A stretch of DNA of 64,000 bases from Prasinococcaceae sp. CCMP 1430 (Eukaryota; Plantae; Prasinodermophyta): assembly GCA_013416795.1 (NCBI GenBank), contig RQSC01000002.1:472145-536144 (forward strand), written 5' to 3'. The translations under genes were made by a program, and so were the position numbers. Positions 10,778-63,264 of the stretch are shown here, piece after piece; positions within the stretch are counted from its first letter, which is position 1, and each line of letters opens with the position of its first letter. Under the pieces are notes generated by a model. The model was not told the DNA's origin and made no database searches. It saw only the letters and a program-made list of their open reading frames with translations.

Positions 10778-13700
10778 TCACATACGCGCGCGCGCGTCCT
10801 CGGCATCAGCAGCCAGCACAACCTGGGGGGTGTTCATGGCATTCAGGTTGCCGCTCTCGGTGCCAGCTGAGGGGTCAATCGTGATGTCAATCACTGTGGG
10901 AGAAGCCCGCATCGAAGAGGTCCCATCGCGGGCCCCTGCACGAGCCATCGCCTCGCCGAGCCTTGCACGGAGCTCAGCTGGGTCGCGCGCGCGCACGCCA
11001 ACAGCGCCGAGTGCTGCGCCGAGCAGGTCGTGTCGCGCGCTGAGCTCCGTCGGCGCCGGGTCACGCGAGAAGGGAGGCGGATTGCCCGCGGGCGATCGTC
11101 GATCACCGCCATATACGCCGCCGTTGTTGAAAACCAAAACTACCAAATTTCTCAAGCTGAAGCGCGCAGCCGTCTCCACCTCGCACGCCGAGAAGCCGAA
11201 AGCCGAATCGCCTTCGATCGCGCATACCACGCGCTCTGGGCACTGCAAGGCGGCGGCGATCGCGTACGGAATGCCGACGCCCATGGTGCCCCAGTTCCCA
11301 GCGTCGAGCTTCTTGAGCGGACTCTCATGCTGGAGGACGATGCGGCACATGTCCATGGTGTTGGCACCCTCGCTCACGATGATAGGCTCAGGCGCGACCC
11401 GCGAGAGCACGGAGCGCACCACTCCGAAGGCTGAGAAGAAGCTCATTGGGGACGTGCGCGTGATGTCGCCACTCGAGGGCAGAGGCGTCAGGCGGGCGTC
11501 TAGCGCCGCGCGCCTGCGGGCAGCCTCAGCCTGCAGCTTCGAGCGCCACTCCGTCCGTTGCTTGTTCACCAGCGCCTCCTGTGCAGATGGCCTGCCACCG
11601 TCGTTTTGTCCAATTCGTGCCTGGTTCGCCAAGGCACCGACGACAGCATCGCAATTCTGCGCTATATTGCCAGTGAGGGTCAGCGCATGCACACGTCCGC
11701 CCCGTGACGCTTCGCTCTCCACGCTTGCGTCGCCGCCTGCCCACGCGTGCTTGCTCGCCTCTTTGCAATCAGAGGTGATCAGGATGAAGCGCGCATCATG
11801 GGCGAAAACGGGGGGTCTTCCGAGGCCCAACATCCAATTGAGTTGCCCACCCACGACGACCGCAACATCGCAGCCCCGAAGCGCCGAGCCGCGCGCCGCC
11901 GATGCGCACAATTCGTGCGAGTCCGGCAGCACGCCTTTGCCCATTGGGAGCGGCACAAACGGCGCGTCGAGTGCCTGGACCAGCATGCGCACGGAGCGGT
12001 CTGCACCTGCGCTCATCGTTGAACCAGCGCCAACGCACATACTTGAGGCCTCCTGCCCGACGATGACTGCGCGGCCGCGTCCGTCAGCTATTACTACTGG
12101 TAAGTGCGCAGCAGCACGGTACAAGCGCGGATGCGATGGGAGCGACCTTCATCAGGCAACTGAAAGAGACTCACCGACTGGCCTTCGGCTGCTTCTGAGT
12201 AGCATGGCCGCCTCTCTGACCACTCGTTCGTCGGCGGGTCGCGCCATGGTGGCCTCCACCATGTGCATGCGTCCAACAAGCTCCTCCACAGCGGCAATAC
12301 TTGCATCGCTGCCATCGCGCCTATTCGCGGTGCTTGCTCCAGAGGAGGACGGCTCATCGTCTGCGCTGCCTGGCCGCGGAAAGCGTGACATGAGTAGGTC
12401 TGCAGGCATGTCTATATACGCAGCGTGTGGCACCCCTGGGTTTGTCAGCCCGCCGGTCAGTGACGCCTTGATTGCGGCGTCCACAGCAGCGGCGATGCCT
12501 TCAGGGTGCCTGAAGTGCGGGCGGAGCGCAATGGCGCAGTGCGGGCGCATGAGCGCCAGCTGGTCAAGTTGCTGGAACCCCCCCAGGCCATCCTCATGCG
12601 TGTCGCAAGCACCGGAGAGCACGAGCAAAGGCATGCCGTTCGCACGCGCATGGCACGCCCCCGCAAGGGCGTTCACGGCGCCAGGCCCAGAAACGGTGAG
12701 AAGCGCGGCCGGCACGCCGCTCAGGAGTCCACTCGCACACGCCGCGTAGCCAGCGGCTTGTTCGGTGCGCATGCCGATGAAACGGATGCCCTCTGCTTGC
12801 GCGGCCGTCGCGAGTTGCGTCACGGGGATGCCGACCACCCCGAACATCATACGCACGCCTCCTTTGGCCAAGGCGCGCGCGACGAGCTCATACCCTGAAG
12901 TTCCTGCTTTGGACGTGCGTTCTGCGACAGAAGATGGGCCGTGCGCGCCCTCCCCGGACGCTCCTTGTCCCTGATTTGGCGTCGAGTCCGAGTCGGACGC
13001 GCGCGCGCCCCGCAAAGATTTCGACTGCACATTTTCGCGATGCGAACCGGTGCGCGCGAAATGCGCGGCGACCATGCGCCGCTGTATCTTGCCAGTAGCA
13101 GTGCGGGGCAGCTCATCGGTGATGTGGATGACCTCGGGCACCTTGTGCGCTGCCAGGCGTTCCCGGCAGTGCGCTTGTATGGCTGCTACCGACGTGTCCC
13201 TCTCGCTGGGGCGCAGGACCACGGCCGCGTGCACTCTCTCGCCGTATTTGATGTCTTTGCCCGCAAACGATGCAGCTTGTGCCACCGCGGGCATCGCCAA
13301 CAAGGCCGAATCCACCTCTAGTGGGCTTATCTTCTCTCCGCCGCGGTTGATGAGCTCCTTGATGCGCCCCTCCAGCGTGAGGAATCCGTCGTGGCTCATG
13401 GACCCAATATCACCAGTGCTAAACCATGAGCCTTCGGCCGCCTGGCGCTGCAGATGTGTGACGGCCACGCTGCCGCCCGCGCTGTCCTTGGTCGGCACGG
13501 GGCCAAACCAAACCGCGCGCGTGAAAGACTCAGCATTGGCTTTGCTCGCTGATGGGCCCACGTACCCTGCAAACAGCGTTGCACCTTGGATGCATACTTC
13601 ACCAGATTCGTTTGCCGCCGTCGTTGCATCGTCGCCAGGCAGAAGGTCGGGAGGCGCCTGCGCCAAGGTCGAGGCGGCCAGCATGCGAACGGGGCTTCCA

Positions 13701-15169
13701 GCAACGGCTGAAGGACCGAGCGTGTCGAGGACGCCCACGCGCACGCCGAGGCGCGTGGCACGTCCCACCGTTCCCGGCCTGCGCGCATTGCGAGGCGCGA
13801 GTGGATTTGACGTCATCTGGTGGCACGCCTCCGTCATCGCGTAAGCTTCGCAGACAGTACTGCCACAGAGTGACTCAAGCTCTGCCAGCACCGACGGCGC
13901 GAGCGACGAACTGCAGCTGCGCACGAACCGAATGCGCGACACAGCATCGGCCATGTACCCGCGCTCTGCCGCGGTCGCTGCGGCCGACCTCGTGCGCGCG
14001 AGCAAGATCTGATGTATGGTCGGCACGGCCGTGTACCACGTTGCCGAGCACGCGTCAAAGTCGCGCCAGAACGCCGCAGCAGAGAAACGGCCGCCCGCGG
14101 GCAACGCCACGGCTGCGCGCGCGGCCAGGGGCGCCATCAGGCCCGCCATCAGGCCGTGCACGTGGAACAGAGGCATCACCAAATATGTCGAATCCTCTGG
14201 CCCGATCGAGTACGTGTCCACGATGTTTCGCATGCTGTGCACCATGTTCGCGTGGCTCAAAGGGACTTGCTTGGGTCGCCCAGTCGTTCCTGAAGTGTGA
14301 AGCATGAGCGCAGCATCGGATGGCCGCGCGAGGCGATGGCGGTGGCGCGCGTCTCCTGTGCTTCCAAACGCGTGCAGTGGCTGCAACCACGGCAGCGGCG
14401 TGAGAGGGCGCAGAGCGAGGCGGCTCATCGATGCCGCTTCTTCTGCATGCTTCCCTCGGCGTCCGCTCGCCGTGATGTGCGATGCTCCGCCCGTGGTGGA
14501 AGGGTGCAGCGACGCCCAGTCGTCCCTGAGCACAACCTCAGCCAGGGGCACGTCGGCGGCGTTACAGGGCCCGCGCGCCGCGTCGAGCGTGGCCGCCGCC
14601 GCCCCCGCGCGCTCGTGCTCGATTTTTGATGCGCTCGTTTTGGCGGCACCTGCGAAGAGCATGAGCTTGGGGCACAAGTCTTTGACGTAAAAATCGAACT
14701 CTGCCGCGGTGTACGCTGGGTTGAGCGGGGCGACGGCGAAGCCCTCGCTCCAGGCCGCCAGCATGCCGGCAACGAGCTCGACACCGTTGCGCATGGCAAA
14801 TGCAATGACTGGCGGGCTGCCGGGGCGAAGCATGTCTTCGGCTGCGGGCAGCCCCGTGCGGCCCGAGCGCGTCTCCACGTGGCTTGAGGAAGGCGTGACT
14901 ATCGCGCGCACAGCTGCCCCGAGCTCAGCGGCCGCTGCAGAGAGCTCCGATCGCGTGAGTGCGATGCCACCATCGAAGCCTGCTGCATAGGGAGGCGGTG
15001 AGGTGTCGCTGTTTGGTGCGACGTCATCGATGGCGGGCATGACCCGCACTGCGGGCGATCTCGGCGCGTCGTAGAACCCCTCCGCCAGCCCGCTGCGGCG
15101 GCCGCCGTCGGCATCCGCGACGCCCTCGATGCCCAGCGCGGCGGCGACCGTTGACGCGCCCCCGCGCAT
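10778..15169 (-). CDS. Fusion of oxalate-CoA ligase (AAE3/Pcs60-like) and TPP-dependent oxalyl-CoA decarboxylase/2-hydroxyacyl-CoA lyase, with PTS1; exons 15169-12175 and 12096-10778 (~1,437 aa; alternative start at 15304)
   Basis: Ligase motifs LHTSGTTGRPKQVPLSH, MPLFHVHGL, GGRFSAAAFW, TWYTAVPTIHQI, FVRSCSSSLAP, EAYAMTEACHQMTSNPL, GRIKELINRGGEKISPLEVD, LPRTATGKIQRR. TPP-enzyme motifs MFGVVGIPV, MRTEQAAGYAA, LTVSGPG, SEGANTMD, LDAGNWGTMGVG, EGDSAFGFS...NNGG. Ends ...ARARM*. Confidence 0.92.
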
Positions 15170-15614
15170 GGCAGCCGCAGCGAGCAAGCAGTGAGCAAGC
15201 CCCGCCGCCCGCGCCGGTGCGCCGCAGCGCGCCAGGAATGGCAGGGGAGCGCGGCCACCCCGCGCGCAAAAATGCGCTGCCGGCCGGCAGCGCTGCATTT
15301 TCATGCATATCACCCGTGCCTCCACACGTCAAATTGCACAAGACTTGGTGCCAGTGATGGTGAGGCATGACATGCAGGGGTGCGGGGTGGGGGTAAGGAC
15401 AGCGAGAGGTCGCCAGAGGCGCGCTCACTCTGCGCCAGAGGCGATGCGGCGCAGCAGCACTCACGCGTGGAGCAAAAAATCGTGCATTGTTCCCGTTACA
15501 TTCGCCCCGATAGGGGCCCGCGCGAGAGCCAGCAAGGCGTCTCCCCGTAGAGAGCGCCCGCGTGGACGCAGTCGCACGCGGCACGCCCGACACGTACACG
15601 GCACACCGACCGCG

Positions 15615-16718
15615 TCAGCCTTCCTCCTCCTCCTTGTTGCGCCTGCGCCGCGCGCTCAGCCCGCTGGCGACCTCTTCGACCTCGTCCCACGCCGCAGCAC
15701 ACTTGTCCGGCGTTTCCGCGCAAATCTCGGCGGCGGCGCCCACCGTGCGCTCGAGCAGCTCGGAGTCGGCGGCGCGCTCGGCGCCGCTCGCATCATCGGC
15801 GCGCTCGGCGCTCGAGGCATCGGCCGGCGCGTTGAGCATGCGCTCGAGCGCACCCGCAGTAGCGAACGATCCCGTGGGGACGTCGCAAGCCTCGCCGTCC
15901 GTGCCACAAGGGTCGAGCGCGCGCGTGCCATCGCCGGCACTGAACTTCTCCTGCGCGCGTTTGAGCAGCGGGAGCTGCGGCGTCTCGCGCCGCAGCGCCG
16001 CAGCGGCCGCGAGCTCGGCGCTCAGGTCGGTACCCGCGGCGGCACTGTCCAGCGGAGCAGCGGCGGGGTCCACCTATGCGATCGTGCGCGCGGCGCAGCA
16101 CGCCGACATCGGCGTTGGCGCCAACCGGGCGCATGTCAGCGCGTGCGGCGAGGCGCCACGCGCAGCGCGCGCATCGCCGCGCCGCGGGCGGACGCGCGTC
16201 CCGCACCTCTCCGTCCTCTCGCCTCTGTCTGCGCCTGGCTGCATCGAGTTCTTCGTACGTCTCCCATGCCACCGCACACTCTGGACCGACGCCCGCCTCC
16301 TGCAGCGGGCCGGCGTGGGCGGGGGGATCGCCGTGGTCAGGGGTGGGGGGGATGGGGGTGAGGCGGTGCGGAAGGGAAGAAGGAAGATCGGATTTCCGTG
16401 GTCAGTCGAGGCGCGGTCGCACGCGCCGCTCGCTCCGCGCGGTCGCACGCGCCGCCCGCTGCCGGGCGCCCGGCGGCTGGCGCGGCCAGCGCGCGGCACA
16501 CGCGGCGCACCTTGCACGCCGCGTCCGCCTCTTCCGCGGCGCGTTCGACGTCCGAGTCGCCGACCGTGCTGCGCTCGAAGAGGTTCGCGTAGCGCGCGAG
16601 CTCCTCCTCGATATCCCCCGCGCCGGCCTCGCCCGCGCCCCCGTCGCCCCCGCTGCCAGCCGCTCGCGCCGNNNNNNNNNNCGGGGCGCGGCGGGTGCGG
16701 GTGCGGGGCGGCGCGCAT
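15615..16718 (-). CDS. CP12-like plastid protein with two CP12 N-terminal modules; exons about 16718-16511 (N-gap inside), 16299-16207, 16073-15615
   Basis: Spliced product has DVERAAEEADAACK|EAGVGPECAVAWETYEELDAA and a second AAAEICAETPDKCAAAWDEVEEVASGLS (CP12 C...C-x-x-AWD-x-VEE motif), with an LDPCGTDGEAC Cys pair between them. The phase-0 introns have canonical ends. Confidence 0.7.
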
Positions 16719-16867
16719 GGATGAATTCCCAGCTCGCGCGCGCGCGCGCGCGGGCGCGCCCCCCGCCGAGAGCGAGCAGGCCTCGGAACCACGCAAGGGA
16801 GCCGCGAGCGCATTGGTCATTTCATTTCGACGCAACACAAATTGAAATTTACAAAGGAGAGGGTTAC

Positions 16868-24310: not shown

Positions 24311-24922
24311 NNNNNNNNNNNNNNNNNNNNNNNNNNNNNNNNNNNNNNNNNNNNNNNNNNNNNNNNNNNNNNNNNNNNNNNNNNNNNNNNNNNNNNNNNN
24401 NNNNNNNNNNNNNNNNNNNNNNNNNNNNNNNNNNNNNNNNNNNNNNNNNNNNNNNNNNNNNNNNNNNNNNNNNNNNNNNNNNNNNNNNNNNNNNNNNNNN
24501 NNNNNNNNNNNNNNNNNNNNNNNNNNNNNNNNNNNNNNNNNNNNNNNNNNNNNNNNNNNNNNNNNNNNNNNNNNNNNNNNNNNNNNNNNNNNNNNNNNNN
24601 NNNNNNNNNNNNNNNNNNNNNNNNNNNNNNNNNNNNNNNNNNNNNNNNNNNNNNNNNNNNNNNNNNNNNNNNNNNNNNNNNNNNNNNNNNNNNNNNNNNN
24701 NNNNNNNNNNNNNNNNNNNNNNNNNNNNNNNNNNNNNNNNNNNNNNNNNNNNNNNNNNNNNNNNNNNNNNNNNNNNNNNNNNNNNNNNNNNNNNNNNNNN
24801 NNNNNNNNNNNNNNNNNNNNNNNNNNNNNNNNNNNNNNNNNNNNNNNNNNNNNNNNNNNNNNNNNNNNNNNNNNNNNNNNNNNNNNNNNNNNNNNNNNNN
24901 NNNNNNNNNNNNNNNNNNNNNN
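24311..24922. other. Assembly gap. Other N-runs: 16672-16681, 35548-35733, 36098-36489, 63133-63232; single Ns at 6204, 47243, 57369
   Basis: Runs of N in the sequence. Confidence 1.
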
Positions 24923-29764: not shown

Positions 29765-32170
29765 TCACGCCGTCCCATCGGCGATGATCTTGTAGATGGC
29801 GTGTGTTTTGTTGGCCTTGATGGCCGCGCGGCACGCGCTCACCACCTTCACCTTGTGCGCGCCGTTGCGCAGTTTGGCTGCTCGCTGGATCATCTGGTTG
29901 ACCTCCTTGAGCGAGGCAAGCAGCTCTGAATGGTTTGTAGCGCGCTTCGTGTGCTCGAGCACGAGATCTCTGTTCGCGTCGCGCATGGCGCCATACATCT
30001 TGCACATGTGCGGCATGTTGCCCATCAGGCGCGCATCTTCGGCCTTCACGACGAGTGCCTTCACAGTGTTGGTGATCTCCGCCATCTCTGCTGTCATTCG
30101 CACGCGAGTGTCGTTGTACTGCTCGACGCGTGCGAGCACCTCAGCGAATGTATCCATCTGCGTGGGAAAGTCCGCCTGCGACTCGAGGTCGGTGATGTCA
30201 AGCACCGCACAGATGTCTTGCACGATGTTGCCCGCCACATCCATATCCTCGCAACGCACCGTGACCTCCCCCACCGCAGCGTTCGCCCGGATGGCCAACG
30301 CGGAGCCGTCGCGCAAGCTCACGAAGACCTCGTTGACGTTGCCAGAATCGTCAACCACTCTTGCCGGCGCCAAAGCCCCCTCTTTCTCCGCGCCCGATGC
30401 CAAGGAAGTACCAATCCAATGCGCAAGCATCGGTATGGCGCTGGGCGACAGTGAGAACGTGACGCCGGCGTTAGGCACGGGCACCTGGCCCGGCGCTGCA
30501 CGCTTGTACATCGCGTACGCGCCCAGGGTCTCCTCAAGCTCGAACACGTGGTACCCCGCCGCGCCGGGCATGGACACAATGACTTTGCCGACGATGGCAA
30601 CGGGCTGGTCCACCTTGGGGCGCAGCTGAACTCGGAACTCGGAGGCCGGCTGGGAGGGCACAGCATAGAGGCTCTCGTCGGTGAAGATGCGCTCGCCAAA
30701 AATCAGTGCCCCAGTGATGACTGCAGGTGGCGTGCAGTTCAGCACGAGGTCGATGGCGCCTGCGCGAACGTTCTGCTCGAGGCGGTGATCAAGGCGCGTT
30801 GAGACGGGGATGACCGACGATGTGTTGGAGGAGGCACCCTTGCCTACACGCGCGTCCAGCGCCTGCAGCTGGAAGAGCAGCTCGGCGCGAGTCTGGGCCA
30901 GCGATTGGATCCGCTCCTCGTTGGCGTCAGCGTCCATCAACGAGCCGGCGCCATCGCCACCGATGTTGTTCAAGCCTGCATCGTCTGCCACACGCTCGGC
31001 GGGCAGGTAGCCCTTGACCTCACCGTTCACACTGCACACGATCAGCTCGTCCTTGCCGTCCATGCGATAGTCGGCCACATCTACCGCCGCCACCGCCGAC
31101 CCGAGGTTGTCCTTGTACACAATCTCGCCCGTGGACTCGAGGCGCACCTCAAGTTTGCCGTTGGACCATCCGGAGACAAGCTCAGGGACGCCATCGTCGT
31201 CGAGATCGTACGCGCCTAGCGCTTTCACCTGATATTTGGACTTCACGCGCCACGCGCGCGCCCCGCGACTGTAAACGCCAACCGTGCCGTTGCCTAGCGC
31301 GTAGCCGTAGGTCACGCCAGACAGATCGGTCAGACCAACGATCCGCTCAGCTTCCGTGGTCTCGGCGATGACCTCCTCGCCACGGAAAACGCGGATGTCA
31401 AAGTCGTCCGAGCCCACCACAAGCTCCTTCTTACCGTCACCGTCCACGTCCGCAAGGCACATTGCGCCCACGTTATCCCCCGTCACCGTCCACAACGCCT
31501 CCTCGCCCGCCGCGTCGAGACCGATCACCGAGCAGTTGCCACCCACGATGGCGAGCGGCGCGCCATCGCCGGCGCCATGCAGCGGCCCCACCGCCAGCCG
31601 AGACACGCCATCCTGCATCTCCTTGAACCAGCTGTCGGCATTGCGGTGCACGTCATAGGCCAGCAAGTTGGACGCGGTCCCGACAAGCAGTACGTCGCGC
31701 CCGCCGGCCGCGCTCGCCGCTTGCACGCCCGCCCCACCGCCACCCCCACCACCCCCGCCGCCGAGCGACCCCGCCGCTAGCGCTGTCACTGCCGCCGCCG
31801 CGTTCAAGTAGCTCACATCCGAGCCCGCCGCAGCAGCAGCAGCGTCGCCGTTCGCCACCTATGCTCCCCGCCGCGACGGACACGTCGGGGATCGGAGATG
31901 GCAATGCGGGCGCAGTGGTTAGCACACACTGCGCGCTCAGAGTCGTTCGCGGGCACGCACCCGGAGGCGCAGGGGCGCCGCCACGCGCGCGCGCGCACGC
32001 TGGCACGCGTCCGCTGCTAGCACGCTGCGCACCTGGCGCGCGCGATGTGGGTTGTGTACGAATATCTTGCCGCCGGTGGTCGCGGCCGTCAGGCAGGGGT
32101 GCTCGCCGTCATACTTGCCGACCGTCGCCAGCCCAGGCTGGATGGAGTCGCTCAGATGCAGCTGGAACGC
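29765..32170 (-). CDS. BBS2: Bardet-Biedl syndrome 2 protein (BBSome subunit); first exon not located
   Basis: AFQLHLSDSIQPGLATVGKYDGEHPCLTAATTGGKIFVHNPH; LLVGTASNLLAYDVHRNAD; IVGGNCSVIGLD...LWTVTGDNV; ELVVGSDDFDIRVF; C-terminal NHSELLASLKEVNQMIQRAAKLR...CRAAIK. Confidence 0.92.
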
Positions 32171-35520: not shown

Positions 35521-36518
35521 GCTGCCGCCGCCGCCGCGCGCGCGCGGNNNNNNNNNNNNNNNNNNNNNNNNNNNNNNNNNNNNNNNNNNNNNNNNNNNNN
35601 NNNNNNNNNNNNNNNNNNNNNNNNNNNNNNNNNNNNNNNNNNNNNNNNNNNNNNNNNNNNNNNNNNNNNNNNNNNNNNNNNNNNNNNNNNNNNNNNNNNN
35701 NNNNNNNNNNNNNNNNNNNNNNNNNNNNNNNNNTCCTCCACACAAGGCGCGCTCCACACGCCACGCCAACGCAACCTCCCTCACCCCCCCCACCACCACC
35801 CTCCCGTCGGTGCTCCATACGGCGCTTGCCCCTCGGCGCCTCGAACGGCGCGCACACGCCCCTGCCTGCAGCTGCCCCGCGCTCCTGCCGCTGCTCGCGA
35901 CGAGCCCACGCTCGGTCGTCGGTCTCAGCCAGCCCAGCCTCTGCCTGATGAGCGTCCCCACTCACTCATCACCCGCCGGCCTGCAGGGCCCGCCTTTCCC
36001 CCCTTCCCCCCCCACTGTGCTGCTGCGTCCGCCTGCCTGCTGGCGGTGCGCCTGCGTCCACCAGCCAGCGAGCCAGCCCGCCCCCCCCTTCCCCCCCNNN
36101 NNNNNNNNNNNNNNNNNNNNNNNNNNNNNNNNNNNNNNNNNNNNNNNNNNNNNNNNNNNNNNNNNNNNNNNNNNNNNNNNNNNNNNNNNNNNNNNNNNNN
36201 NNNNNNNNNNNNNNNNNNNNNNNNNNNNNNNNNNNNNNNNNNNNNNNNNNNNNNNNNNNNNNNNNNNNNNNNNNNNNNNNNNNNNNNNNNNNNNNNNNNN
36301 NNNNNNNNNNNNNNNNNNNNNNNNNNNNNNNNNNNNNNNNNNNNNNNNNNNNNNNNNNNNNNNNNNNNNNNNNNNNNNNNNNNNNNNNNNNNNNNNNNNN
36401 NNNNNNNNNNNNNNNNNNNNNNNNNNNNNNNNNNNNNNNNNNNNNNNNNNNNNNNNNNNNNNNNNNNNNNNNNNNNNNNNNNNNNNNNNCGCCGCGCCCG
36501 CGCGCGCGGCGGTGCGCA

Positions 36519-63094: not shown

Positions 63095-63264
63095 GTTTGC
63101 GCGCCGCGCTCCCTTCGCCGCCGCTGCCTCCGNNNNNNNNNNNNNNNNNNNNNNNNNNNNNNNNNNNNNNNNNNNNNNNNNNNNNNNNNNNNNNNNNNNN
63201 NNNNNNNNNNNNNNNNNNNNNNNNNNNNNNNNTCGGATTAGGGTGTGCTGGGTTTTATTTTCTC

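What the first reader, a model, noticed from the sequence alone, without database searches (positions are those of the whole stretch)
10778..15169. Single-polypeptide oxalate-CoA ligase / oxalyl-CoA decarboxylase fusion
Seen: one uninterrupted reading frame runs from a full AAE3/Pcs60-type adenylating enzyme (about 14800-13060), through a ~45-aa Ser/Gly-rich linker, into the Pyr domain of a TPP enzyme (MFGVVGIPV, MRTEQAAGYAA). There is no stop or intron at the junction, so the fusion is not a gene-model artefact. One 78-nt intron later joins the remaining HACL/OXC domains, with an intact GDSAFGFS...NN motif. Known: in plants oxalate is degraded by separate enzymes, AAE3 (oxalate to oxalyl-CoA) and then the HACL/oxalyl-CoA decarboxylase (oxalyl-CoA to formyl-CoA + CO2); yeast Pcs60 is a stand-alone ligase. 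Inference: two consecutive steps are fused, allowing channelling of oxalyl-CoA and CO2 release. I do not know of a characterised example, but cannot exclude that one exists.
Basis: partly seen in the sequence, partly recalled or inferred. Interest (0 to 1): 0.88.

Follow-up and report, generated by a model that had tools for sequence, protein, structure and literature searches.

The report
Fused oxalate-activating and oxalyl-CoA-splitting enzyme gene
This green alga (Prasinoderma coloniale) makes the two enzymes that plants use one after the other to destroy oxalate as a single protein; the fusion is real, but it is old, widespread in algae and mosses, and already in public gene catalogues, though apparently never studied.

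Summary
One minus-strand gene (15169..10778) reads without a stop from an AAE3/Pcs60-type oxalate-CoA ligase, through a 52-residue disordered linker, into a complete oxalyl-CoA decarboxylase (OXC/HACL) enzyme that depends on thiamine diphosphate (ThDP).

It has one intron. Both keep the frame.

The window is Prasinoderma coloniale. The fused protein is already in its public gene set (PRCOL_00004783, 1427 aa).

The same ligase-then-decarboxylase order occurs in 50 protein clusters. These cover chlorophytes, streptophyte algae, mosses and liverworts, Galdieria, Chromera and Rhytidocystis. Databases mostly call them "2-hydroxyacyl-CoA lyase". One glaucophyte transcript has the reverse order.

All eight oxalate-pocket residues of Arabidopsis AAE3 are identical here, and the OXC catalytic residues match Arabidopsis OXC.

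In trees, the stand-alone OXC of vascular plants nests inside the fused moss and liverwort clade. The AAE3 tree is compatible with the same history. The separate plant genes therefore probably arose by fission.

The C-terminus ends in ARM, a tripeptide validated as a peroxisomal signal in plants.

I found no paper describing the natural fusion. It is a genuine, uncharacterised variant of a known pathway, of moderate interest. Substrate channelling is untested.

The parts
10778..15169 (-). Whole gene: start codon to stop codon (TGA at 10780..10778). It encodes 1427 aa with the 108-nt intron or 1437 aa with the 78-nt intron, and equals PRCOL_00004783 of Prasinoderma coloniale.
13058..14992 (-). 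Oxalate-CoA ligase (AAE3/Pcs60-type adenylate-forming CoA ligase) half, residues about 60-704. Pfam AMP-binding covers 14809..13562 and AMP-binding_C covers 13318..13088. It has four lineage-specific low-confidence loop insertions (residues 97-117, 222-273, 503-517, 557-578).
14156..14164 (-). H336-V337-H338, matching AtAAE3 H214 (gate residue) and V215-H216 (oxalate pocket).
13910..13915 (-). C419-S420, matching AtAAE3 C288-S289. S289 contacts oxalate and is specific to oxalyl-CoA synthetases.
13820..13840 (-). A444-M445...H450, matching AtAAE3 A313-M314 and H319. H319 contacts oxalate and is specific to oxalyl-CoA synthetases.
13088..13090 (-). K694, matching AtAAE3 K500, the catalytic lysine of the conserved C-terminal (A10) motif of this ligase superfamily (the TGKIQRR motif).
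12902..13057 (-). Inter-enzyme linker, residues 705-756 (52 aa, rich in S, G and A). Predicted disordered (pLDDT 31-42). Orthologues have linkers of 10-62 aa with no conserved sequence.
12551..12895 (-). Pyr domain (Pfam TPP_enzyme_N) of the OXC half. It includes the cofactor-activating Glu803 (12763..12761) and F865-Q866 (12577..12572), which match AtOXC F120-Q121.
12067..12174 (-). Intron, phase 1, GTGAGT...GCGCAG, 108 nt as in the published model.
11744..12220 (-). Middle (R) domain (Pfam TPP_enzyme_M, residues 984-1106), interrupted by the intron.
10934..11368 (-). PP domain (Pfam TPP_enzyme_C, residues 1232-1376). It holds the ThDP/Mg motif GDSAFGFS...NN (11212..11123) and Y1317 (11113..11111), which matches AtOXC Y488.
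10850..10867 (-). C-terminal lid motif AGTESG. The Ser aligns with the serine that is changed to Gly in the engineered MeOXC variant (7AYG against 7B2E).
10781..10789 (-). C-terminal tripeptide ARM, a PTS1-type peroxisomal targeting signal candidate at the end of a low-confidence C-terminal extension.

Best explanation
The gene encodes one polypeptide that carries out the first two steps of CoA-dependent oxalate breakdown. The N-terminal half is an orthologue of plant AAE3 and yeast Pcs60. It adenylates oxalate and transfers it to CoA: oxalate + ATP + CoA gives oxalyl-CoA + AMP + PPi. The C-terminal half is an orthologue of plant OXC. It uses thiamine diphosphate and Mg2+ to decarboxylate oxalyl-CoA to formyl-CoA + CO2. 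A flexible, non-conserved linker tethers the ligase to the N-terminus of the decarboxylase, which in solved relatives forms dimers or tetramers. The fusion therefore guarantees equal amounts, proximity and a shared location, rather than forming a sealed channel. The C-terminal ARM tripeptide probably sends the whole protein to the peroxisome, where glycolate and glyoxylate oxidation can produce oxalate. The fusion is ancient in green plants, and the separate AAE3 and OXC genes of vascular plants most likely arose from it by fission. Shown here: the gene structure, domain content, residue conservation, orthology and distribution. Inferred: the catalytic activities, that the protein stays as one chain in vivo, the peroxisomal location, and any kinetic advantage.
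For: One open frame runs across the junction, and the five Pfam domains occur in order.

Ligase half:
- The best solved relatives are the three oxalyl-CoA synthetases: AtAAE3 5IE0 (E 2e-107), grass pea 6QJZ, and Pcs60 8AFF (6e-88). The next family, malonyl-CoA synthetase, scores only 1e-35.
- The same ranking appears by structure.
- All eight residues that shape the AtAAE3 oxalate pocket are identical, including S289 and H319, which are specific to oxalyl-CoA synthetases (PMC8905533). Six of them are invariant and two are nearly invariant across 36 AAE3-type sequences.

Decarboxylase half:
- The best solved relatives are OXC and HACL enzymes.
- The best stand-alone database relatives are vascular-plant OXC orthologues.
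- The residues matching AtOXC E58, F120-Q121 and Y488 and the Mg motif are identical (PMC8004701).

Trees:
- Stand-alone vascular-plant OXC nests inside the fused moss and liverwort clade (support 100/100, 96/90, 99/94, kept).
- The window's half sits in a 97/97 clade of fused chlorophyte-type proteins.
- Seed-plant AAE3 lies in the streptophyte clade together with the fused ligase halves (97/96).
- Forcing land plants into one clade gives a better likelihood (p-AU 0.76).

Conservation of the fusion:
- 50 clusters share the same order, including transcriptome-derived proteins.
- One glaucophyte transcript has the reverse order.
- A relative 55% identical (P0003, locus L001) and contigs from wild populations keep the fused frame under purifying selection.

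Folds and targeting:
- Both halves fold confidently (core pLDDT 85-97), and the insertions and the linker are disordered.
- ARM was experimentally verified as a plant PTS1 tripeptide (PMC9542071).
- PTS1-like endings (SKL, AKL, SKM, SRL) are common among the chlorophyte, Chromera and Gloeochaete fused proteins.
Against: - No transcript or protein data for this organism were available, so cleavage in the linker or an internal start cannot be excluded.
- No activity was measured. By sequence and structure alone the ThDP half is about equally close to bacterial OXC and to 2-hydroxyacyl-CoA lyases/synthases.
- The window's protein sits on long branches in both trees (about 2 substitutions per site) and carries many insertions.
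- Acidic residues just before ARM may weaken the targeting signal. ARM is a low-frequency, non-canonical PTS1.
- Arabidopsis AAE3 and OXC are cytosolic.
- Neighbouring genes give no pathway context.
Confidence: 0.8

Rival explanations
1. As the database name suggests, the protein is a 2-hydroxyacyl-CoA lyase module for alpha-oxidation. The ligase half would activate 2-hydroxy acids, and the ThDP half would cleave 2-hydroxyacyl-CoA to formyl-CoA plus an aldehyde.
For: UniRef and NCBI name most fused orthologues '2-hydroxyacyl-CoA lyase'. The ThDP half is about as close to solved HACL/HACS enzymes as to OXC. Animal HACL1 belongs to the same eukaryotic family and is peroxisomal.
Against: The ligase pocket is residue for residue the small oxalate pocket of AtAAE3. 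The ThDP half belongs to the green-plant lineage that contains the biochemically proven AtOXC, and is separate from the animal and fungal HACL1 clade. The names are automatic transfers from HACL1.
Confidence: 0.07
2. The gene is translated as one chain, but the cell ends up with two separate enzymes, through proteolysis in the disordered linker or through an internal transcription or translation start. In that case the fusion serves only co-expression.
For: The linker is long, disordered and not conserved. No protein-level evidence is available here. Vascular plants work well with separate enzymes.
Against: With the signal only at the C-terminus, a cleaved ligase half would lose its targeting. 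The in-frame junction is kept in 50 clusters, some with linkers as short as 10 aa, which leaves little room for a processing site.
Confidence: 0.1
3. The fusion is an assembly or gene-model artefact: two neighbouring genes were read as one.
For: GC-rich genomes keep long frames open by chance. Several long antisense ORFs overlap this gene.
Against: There is no stop, and no sign of a second gene start, between the halves. The same junction is present in three independent environmental assemblies and in a relative 55% identical. It is also present in transcriptome-derived orthologues. Substitutions follow the coding frame.
Confidence: 0.02

Closest known systems
Arabidopsis AAE3 (oxalyl-CoA synthetase, PDB 5IE0/5IE2/5IE3), grass pea LsOCS (6QJZ) and yeast Pcs60 (8AFF)
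   Same: They share the fold and the ligase-superfamily motifs. All eight oxalate-pocket residues are identical to AtAAE3. They are the best sequence and structure matches.
   Different: Those enzymes are stand-alone proteins of 514-543 aa. Here the ligase is the N-terminal half of a 1427-aa chain, has four extra disordered loops and an N-terminal extension of about 50 aa, and has no targeting signal of its own. Pcs60 carries its own PTS1 (from memory, not checked here).
Arabidopsis OXC (At5g17380) and maize OCD1, the plant oxalyl-CoA decarboxylases
   Same: In trees the C-terminal half belongs to the same green-plant lineage as these plant enzymes. It has the same F-Q pair, Tyr, Glu and Mg motif as AtOXC.
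   Different: The plant enzymes are free-standing proteins of about 570 aa, cytosolic in Arabidopsis, and end in ...HKN. The algal half is fused to the ligase and has a C-terminal extension ending in ARM.
Fused orthologues already in databases, e.g. Chlorella sorokiniana '2-hydroxyacyl-lyase isoform A', Coccomyxa sp. Obi 'probable 2-hydroxyacyl-CoA lyase at C-terminar half', Marchantia paleacea Mapa_006291, Galdieria sulphuraria and Chromera velia '2-hydroxyacyl-CoA lyase'
   Same: They have the same five-domain order and 38-48% identity, and both halves are orthologous.
   Different: They are about 1100-1240 aa. The Prasinoderma protein is about 300 aa longer because of disordered insertions. 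None of them is described in the literature I could search.
Bacterial oxalate operon (oxc with frc, the formyl-CoA transferase gene), as in Oxalobacter, E. coli and Acetobacter
   Same: It uses the same ThDP decarboxylase chemistry. Identity to the window's half is 34-35%.
   Different: Bacteria make oxalyl-CoA with a CoA-transferase encoded by a separate neighbouring gene, not with an ATP-dependent ligase fused to OXC. Their active site has Y-E where the eukaryotic enzymes have F-Q.
Human and animal HACL1 (peroxisomal 2-hydroxyacyl-CoA lyase)
   Same: It belongs to the same family and fold, and is peroxisomal.
   Different: It forms a separate clade with the fungal homologues (100/100), cleaves 2-hydroxyacyl-CoA, and is never fused to an AAE3-type ligase among the hits seen.

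Membership tests
AAE3/Pcs60 oxalate-CoA ligase (EC 6.2.1.8) | Two-subdomain fold of the adenylate-forming ligase superfamily with its core motifs: P-loop TSGTTGRPK, YAMTE, TGD, hinge GRIKELINRGGEKI, and the catalytic Lys of the C-terminal (A10) motif | tested here: met
   Motifs are at residues 292, 443, 585, 601 and 692. Pfam AMP-binding and AMP-binding_C match. Core pLDDT is 85-97, and the best structural matches are 5IE2, 6QJZ and 8AFF.
AAE3/Pcs60 oxalate-CoA ligase (EC 6.2.1.8) | Oxalate pocket: V215-H216, C288-S289, A313-M314, H319 and K500 of AtAAE3. S289 and H319 are specific to oxalyl-CoA synthetases. | tested here: met
   All eight residues are identical (V337, H338, C419, S420, A444, M445, H450, K694). 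They are invariant or nearly invariant across 36 sequences.
AAE3/Pcs60 oxalate-CoA ligase (EC 6.2.1.8) | Closer to characterised oxalyl-CoA synthetases than to any other ligase family of the superfamily | tested here: met
   E-values are 2e-107 to 6e-88 for AAE3, LsOCS and Pcs60, against 1e-35 for the next family. The half lies among AAE3 orthologues in the tree, although no other ligase family was included as an outgroup.
AAE3/Pcs60 oxalate-CoA ligase (EC 6.2.1.8) | Oxalate-dependent formation of oxalyl-CoA | not testable with these tools
   This needs an enzyme assay.
OXC/HACL ThDP-dependent acyl-CoA lyase family; plant OXC (EC 4.1.1.8) | Pyr, R and PP domains, the cofactor-activating Glu, and the GDS...NN ThDP/Mg motif | tested here: met
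   Pfam TPP_enzyme_N, TPP_enzyme_M and TPP_enzyme_C match. E803 and the GDSAFGFS...NN motif are present. pTM is 0.87, and the target-normalised TM-score reaches 0.92 against EcOXC.
OXC/HACL ThDP-dependent acyl-CoA lyase family; plant OXC (EC 4.1.1.8) | Active-site residues of the plant OXC type (AtOXC F120, Q121, Y488) and the Ser of the C-terminal lid | tested here: met
   F865, Q866, Y1317 and the AGTESG motif are present.
OXC/HACL ThDP-dependent acyl-CoA lyase family; plant OXC (EC 4.1.1.8) | Orthology to biochemically proven plant OXC rather than to animal HACL1 | tested here: met
   The green-plant clade (97/90) contains both the fused proteins and the vascular-plant OXC. Animal and fungal HACL1 form a separate 100/100 clade.
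OXC/HACL ThDP-dependent acyl-CoA lyase family; plant OXC (EC 4.1.1.8) | [quoted passage not shown] | not testable with these tools
   Neither sequence nor structure separates OXC from HACL activity.
Fused AAE3-OXC orthologue group (database proteins named '2-hydroxyacyl-CoA lyase', about 1100-1240 aa) | Single chain with the order AMP-binding, AMP-binding_C, TPP_N, TPP_M, TPP_C, and both halves orthologous | tested here: met
   50 clusters share the order. P0121 has all five domains. Both halves group with the fused proteins in the trees.
PTS1-targeted peroxisomal matrix proteins | C-terminal tripeptide that works as a PTS1, in a permissive upstream context | tested here: inconclusive
   ARM is listed as a newly verified plant PTS1 (PMC9542071). 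It is a low-frequency signal, and the upstream residues here are partly acidic. No localisation data are available.

The most novel reading that the evidence does not exclude
The fused AAE3-OXC protein is the ancestral form of the oxalate-degrading pathway in green plants. It is present in Prasinodermophyta, Chlorophyta, streptophyte algae, mosses and liverworts. The two separate, well-studied genes of vascular plants are products of a gene fission. A second, reverse-order fusion in a glaucophyte, built on a ThDP half of the HACL1 lineage, would show that selection has joined these two activities more than once. That would imply a real kinetic or targeting benefit, such as protecting the cell from labile oxalyl-CoA, or importing both enzymes with one peroxisomal signal.
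Probability: 0.45. Interest if true: 0.55.

Novelty: new variant of a known kind. Interest (0 to 1): 0.4.

Why it matters
- **Independent support for the plant pathway.** The fusion is a natural "Rosetta stone". It supports, independently of the plant genetics, the view that AAE3 and the HACL-like ThDP enzyme act consecutively on oxalate.
- **Better annotation.** It argues that the many algal and bryophyte proteins labelled "2-hydroxyacyl-CoA lyase" are really bifunctional oxalate-degrading enzymes.
- **A datable evolutionary event.** It gives a likely gene fission in the plant lineage that could be dated.
- **A test case for channelling.** It is a ready-made single-chain enzyme for asking whether tethering helps with a labile CoA thioester.
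- **Possible use in engineering.** OXC/HACL enzymes are used in engineered one-carbon pathways, so compact natural fusions that make formyl-CoA from oxalate may be useful parts.

None of this overturns current understanding. The chemistry and both enzyme families are well known.

Tried and rejected
- **Literature.** Ten full-text searches found no description of a natural fusion. They combined oxalyl-CoA synthetase/decarboxylase, AAE3, fusion/fused/gene fusion, algae, Chlamydomonas, Chromera, Pcs60/Pxp1 and Prasinoderma. The AtOXC paper, the 2022 OXC phylogeny paper and the alveolate peroxisome paper do not mention one. Subscription journals are not covered.
- **Second reverse-order fusion.** A search across the Gloeochaete junction found none. 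No other hit spanned the junction: all but one covered no more than about half of the region. That case therefore rests on one transcript.
- **Gene neighbourhood.** The neighbours are a glycosyltransferase-like gene, a NIF phosphatase-like ORF and BBS2. None is related to the pathway.
- **Earlier notes of this scan.** Nothing on oxalate turned up.
- **Not possible here.** I could not search the rest of the genome for separate AAE3 or OXC copies, or for formyl-CoA hydrolase or formate dehydrogenase.
- **Whole-protein fold.** This was not attempted. The protein exceeds the 1200-residue limit and no inter-domain error estimate is returned, so the two halves were folded separately.
- **Free ligase tree.** It placed seed-plant AAE3 outside the group of bryophytes plus zygnematophytes. 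The constrained land-plant tree is at least as good, so I do not read this as evidence for old paralogues.


Full report
**What is in the sequence**

On the minus strand, an ORF runs from 15325 to 12152 (1057 codons, first Met at 15169). A second ORF runs from 12124 to 10778. Pfam places AMP-binding (9e-54), AMP-binding_C and TPP_enzyme_N on the first ORF, and TPP_enzyme_M and TPP_enzyme_C on the second.

A phase-1 GTGAGT...CAG segment of 78 nt (12174..12097) joins the two ORFs in frame. A second acceptor 30 nt further on (12067) is also in frame.

**Organism and existing annotation**

The 90%-identity cluster of the window's protein contains the EukProt entry EP00793 Prasinoderma coloniale PRCOL_00004783-RA (P0121, 1427 aa). 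It is identical to my spliced translation except that it lacks 10 residues. That difference corresponds exactly to the 108-nt intron 12174..12067. Those 10 residues are an insertion relative to all 13 aligned homologues, so I favour the published splice.

The window is therefore P. coloniale nuclear DNA, and the fused gene model is already public.

**Is the fusion real?**

- Three environmental contigs about 99% identical (one Tara metagenome, two sequencing runs) carry the same open frame across the junction.
- Against them, the exons differ by 0.5-1.3%, mostly at third codon positions (26 of 42; 32 of 47). The 78-nt intron segment differs by 3.9-5.1% and the flanks by 2.5-3.9%. There are no indels within the gene.
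- A relative only 55% identical (P0003, locus L001) also runs from the ligase through the linker into the ThDP enzyme in one ORF.
- Fifty protein clusters from other organisms have the same five-domain order. They include chlorophytes (Chlorella, Micractinium, Coccomyxa, Trebouxia, Chlamydomonas eustigma, Polytomella, Chloropicon, Ostreobium, Botryococcus) and streptophyte algae (Closterium, Chlorokybus, Mesotaenium). They also include bryophytes (Marchantia paleacea, Calypogeia, Sphagnum), the red alga Galdieria, Chromera velia and Rhytidocystis.
- Several of these come from transcriptome assemblies, so fused mRNAs exist in relatives.

A gene-model artefact is effectively excluded. Whether the chain stays intact in the cell is not known.

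**The ligase half**

Its best solved relatives are the three known oxalyl-CoA synthetases: Arabidopsis AAE3 (2e-107), grass pea LsOCS, and yeast Pcs60 (6e-88). The next family, malonyl-CoA synthetase, scores 1e-35. The predicted structure gives the same ranking.

The grass pea paper lists the eight residues that form the AtAAE3 oxalate pocket. It states that S289 and H319 are conserved only among oxalyl-CoA synthetases (PMC8905533). All eight are identical here: V337, H338, C419, S420, A444, M445, H450 and K694. They are invariant or nearly invariant across 36 fused and free AAE3-type sequences.

The core motifs of the adenylate-forming ligase superfamily are intact. The N-terminal extension and four Prasinoderma-specific insertions are predicted as disordered loops around a confident core.

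**The ThDP half**

Its best solved relatives are bacterial OXC (MeOXC 8e-63, EcOXC, OfOXC) and 2-hydroxyacyl-CoA lyases/synthases. The two groups score about equally, so these comparisons alone cannot tell OXC from HACL.

The closest free-standing proteins in the large database are all vascular-plant OXC orthologues. The residues highlighted for Arabidopsis OXC (E58, F120, Q121, Y488, the Mg ligands) are identical here (PMC8004701).

Two residues changed in the engineered MeOXC variant can be seen by comparing 7AYG with 7B2E: the Tyr after the NN motif and the lid Ser. Both are kept in their native form here.

The model is confident (pLDDT 82.5, pTM 0.87). Only the insertions and the C-terminal tail are of low confidence.

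**Evolution**

The ThDP-half tree is rooted on two bacterial OXCs taken from oxalate operons.

- Fern, conifer and flowering-plant OXC nest inside the fused bryophyte clade with strong support (100/100, 96/90, 99/94). This holds after animal and fungal HACL1 are added.
- Animal and fungal HACL1 form a separate 100/100 clade.
- The window's half lies in a 97/97 clade of fused chlorophyte-type proteins.
- In the ligase tree, seed-plant AAE3 and Chara fall in the streptophyte clade together with the fused bryophyte and zygnematophyte halves (97/96).
- The free tree put seed plants just outside bryophytes plus zygnematophytes. Forcing land plants into one clade gave a higher likelihood (p-AU 0.76).

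Both halves are therefore compatible with a single old fusion followed by fission on the way to vascular plants. For the ligase half, replacement by an older free paralogue is not excluded.

The window's branches are long (about 2 substitutions per site), so its exact position is uncertain.

**An independent fusion?**

The glaucophyte Gloeochaete wittrockiana transcript P0040 has the opposite order, ThDP enzyme first and ligase second. Its ThDP half groups with the animal and fungal HACL1 clade (100/100). That fits an independent fusion. However, a search across its junction found no second example, so an assembly chimera cannot be ruled out.

**Location**

The protein ends in ARM, on a disordered C-terminal extension. 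ARM is listed as an experimentally verified, low-frequency plant PTS1 tripeptide (PMC9542071).

Most chlorophyte fused proteins, Chromera and Gloeochaete end in SKL, AKL, SKM, SRL or similar. Streptophyte and Galdieria fused proteins end in HRN, HKN or SHN. Arabidopsis OXC also ends in HKN and is cytosolic.

A peroxisomal location is therefore plausible for Prasinoderma, but unproven. If it is right, one signal would carry both activities.

**How it most likely works**

Oxalate is adenylated and thioesterified by the N-terminal half. The oxalyl-CoA is then decarboxylated by the tethered ThDP half to formyl-CoA and CO2.

The linker is 52 aa here and 10-62 aa in orthologues. It is not conserved in sequence and is predicted to be disordered. 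I infer a flexible tether that still lets the ligase's C-terminal subdomain rotate. The tether would provide proximity, a fixed 1:1 ratio and shared targeting, rather than a physical tunnel.

The activities, the oligomeric state and any kinetic gain are inferred, not shown.

**Novelty**

The architecture is catalogued in databases, usually as "2-hydroxyacyl-CoA lyase". One entry explicitly notes the lyase "at C-terminar half". None of ten literature searches, nor the key papers on plant AAE3 and OXC, mentions a natural fusion.

I rate it a new, undescribed variant of a well-known pathway. It is not a new kind of system, and its interest is moderate.

Noticed in passing
P0040 (Gloeochaete wittrockiana, MMETSP1089 transcript), not in the window: Reverse-order fusion: TPP_N/M/C at residues 15-541, then AMP-binding and AMP-binding_C at 609-1098, ending in SRL. 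Its ThDP half groups with animal and fungal HACL1, not with the green-plant fused clade. No second example was found, so it may be an independent fusion or an assembly chimera.
   Followed up: partly
window 12007-12042 (-): An in-frame 36-nt segment, GTATGT...GCGCAG (phase 1), coincides with a Prasinoderma-specific insertion in the TPP_M domain, which the model predicts with low confidence. It could be a very short unannotated intron or simply a loop. This needs RNA data.
   Followed up: no
window 29765-31858 (-): An ORF with the full set of BBS2 domains (ciliary BBSome subunit 2; BBS2_Mid 8e-42, plus the hairpin, GAE, N-terminal and platform domains). From memory, this alga is described as a non-flagellate coccoid, so the gene may hint at a hidden flagellate stage or at another role for the BBSome.
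   Followed up: no
P0054 (Coccomyxa subellipsoidea C-169, 550 aa) against P0011 (Coccomyxa sp. Obi, 1121 aa): The 'stand-alone' AAE3 of C-169 is almost identical to the ligase half of the fused protein of a sister strain (branch lengths 0.08 and 0.07). Some free algal AAE3 entries may be split gene models rather than real fissions.
   Followed up: no
window 16672-16681, 24311-24922, 35548-35733, 36098-36489, 63133-63232: There are assembly gaps (runs of N). None touches the gene studied, but ORFs that cross them, such as 15562..16845, are unreliable.
   Followed up: no
window 10830-12749 (+) and other ORFs overlapping the gene: Long antisense or off-frame ORFs (up to 639 aa) overlap the gene. 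This is expected in DNA of 65-70% GC, and the neighbouring long ORFs that I scanned had no Pfam match. They are not evidence of overlapping genes.
   Followed up: partly
Chromera velia P0045 and Rhytidocystis pertsovi P0064: Two alveolates carry the green-type ligase-then-OXC fusion, and their ThDP halves fall among the chlorophyte-type sequences. The branches are long, so a green-algal origin by gene transfer is possible but not shown.
   Followed up: partly
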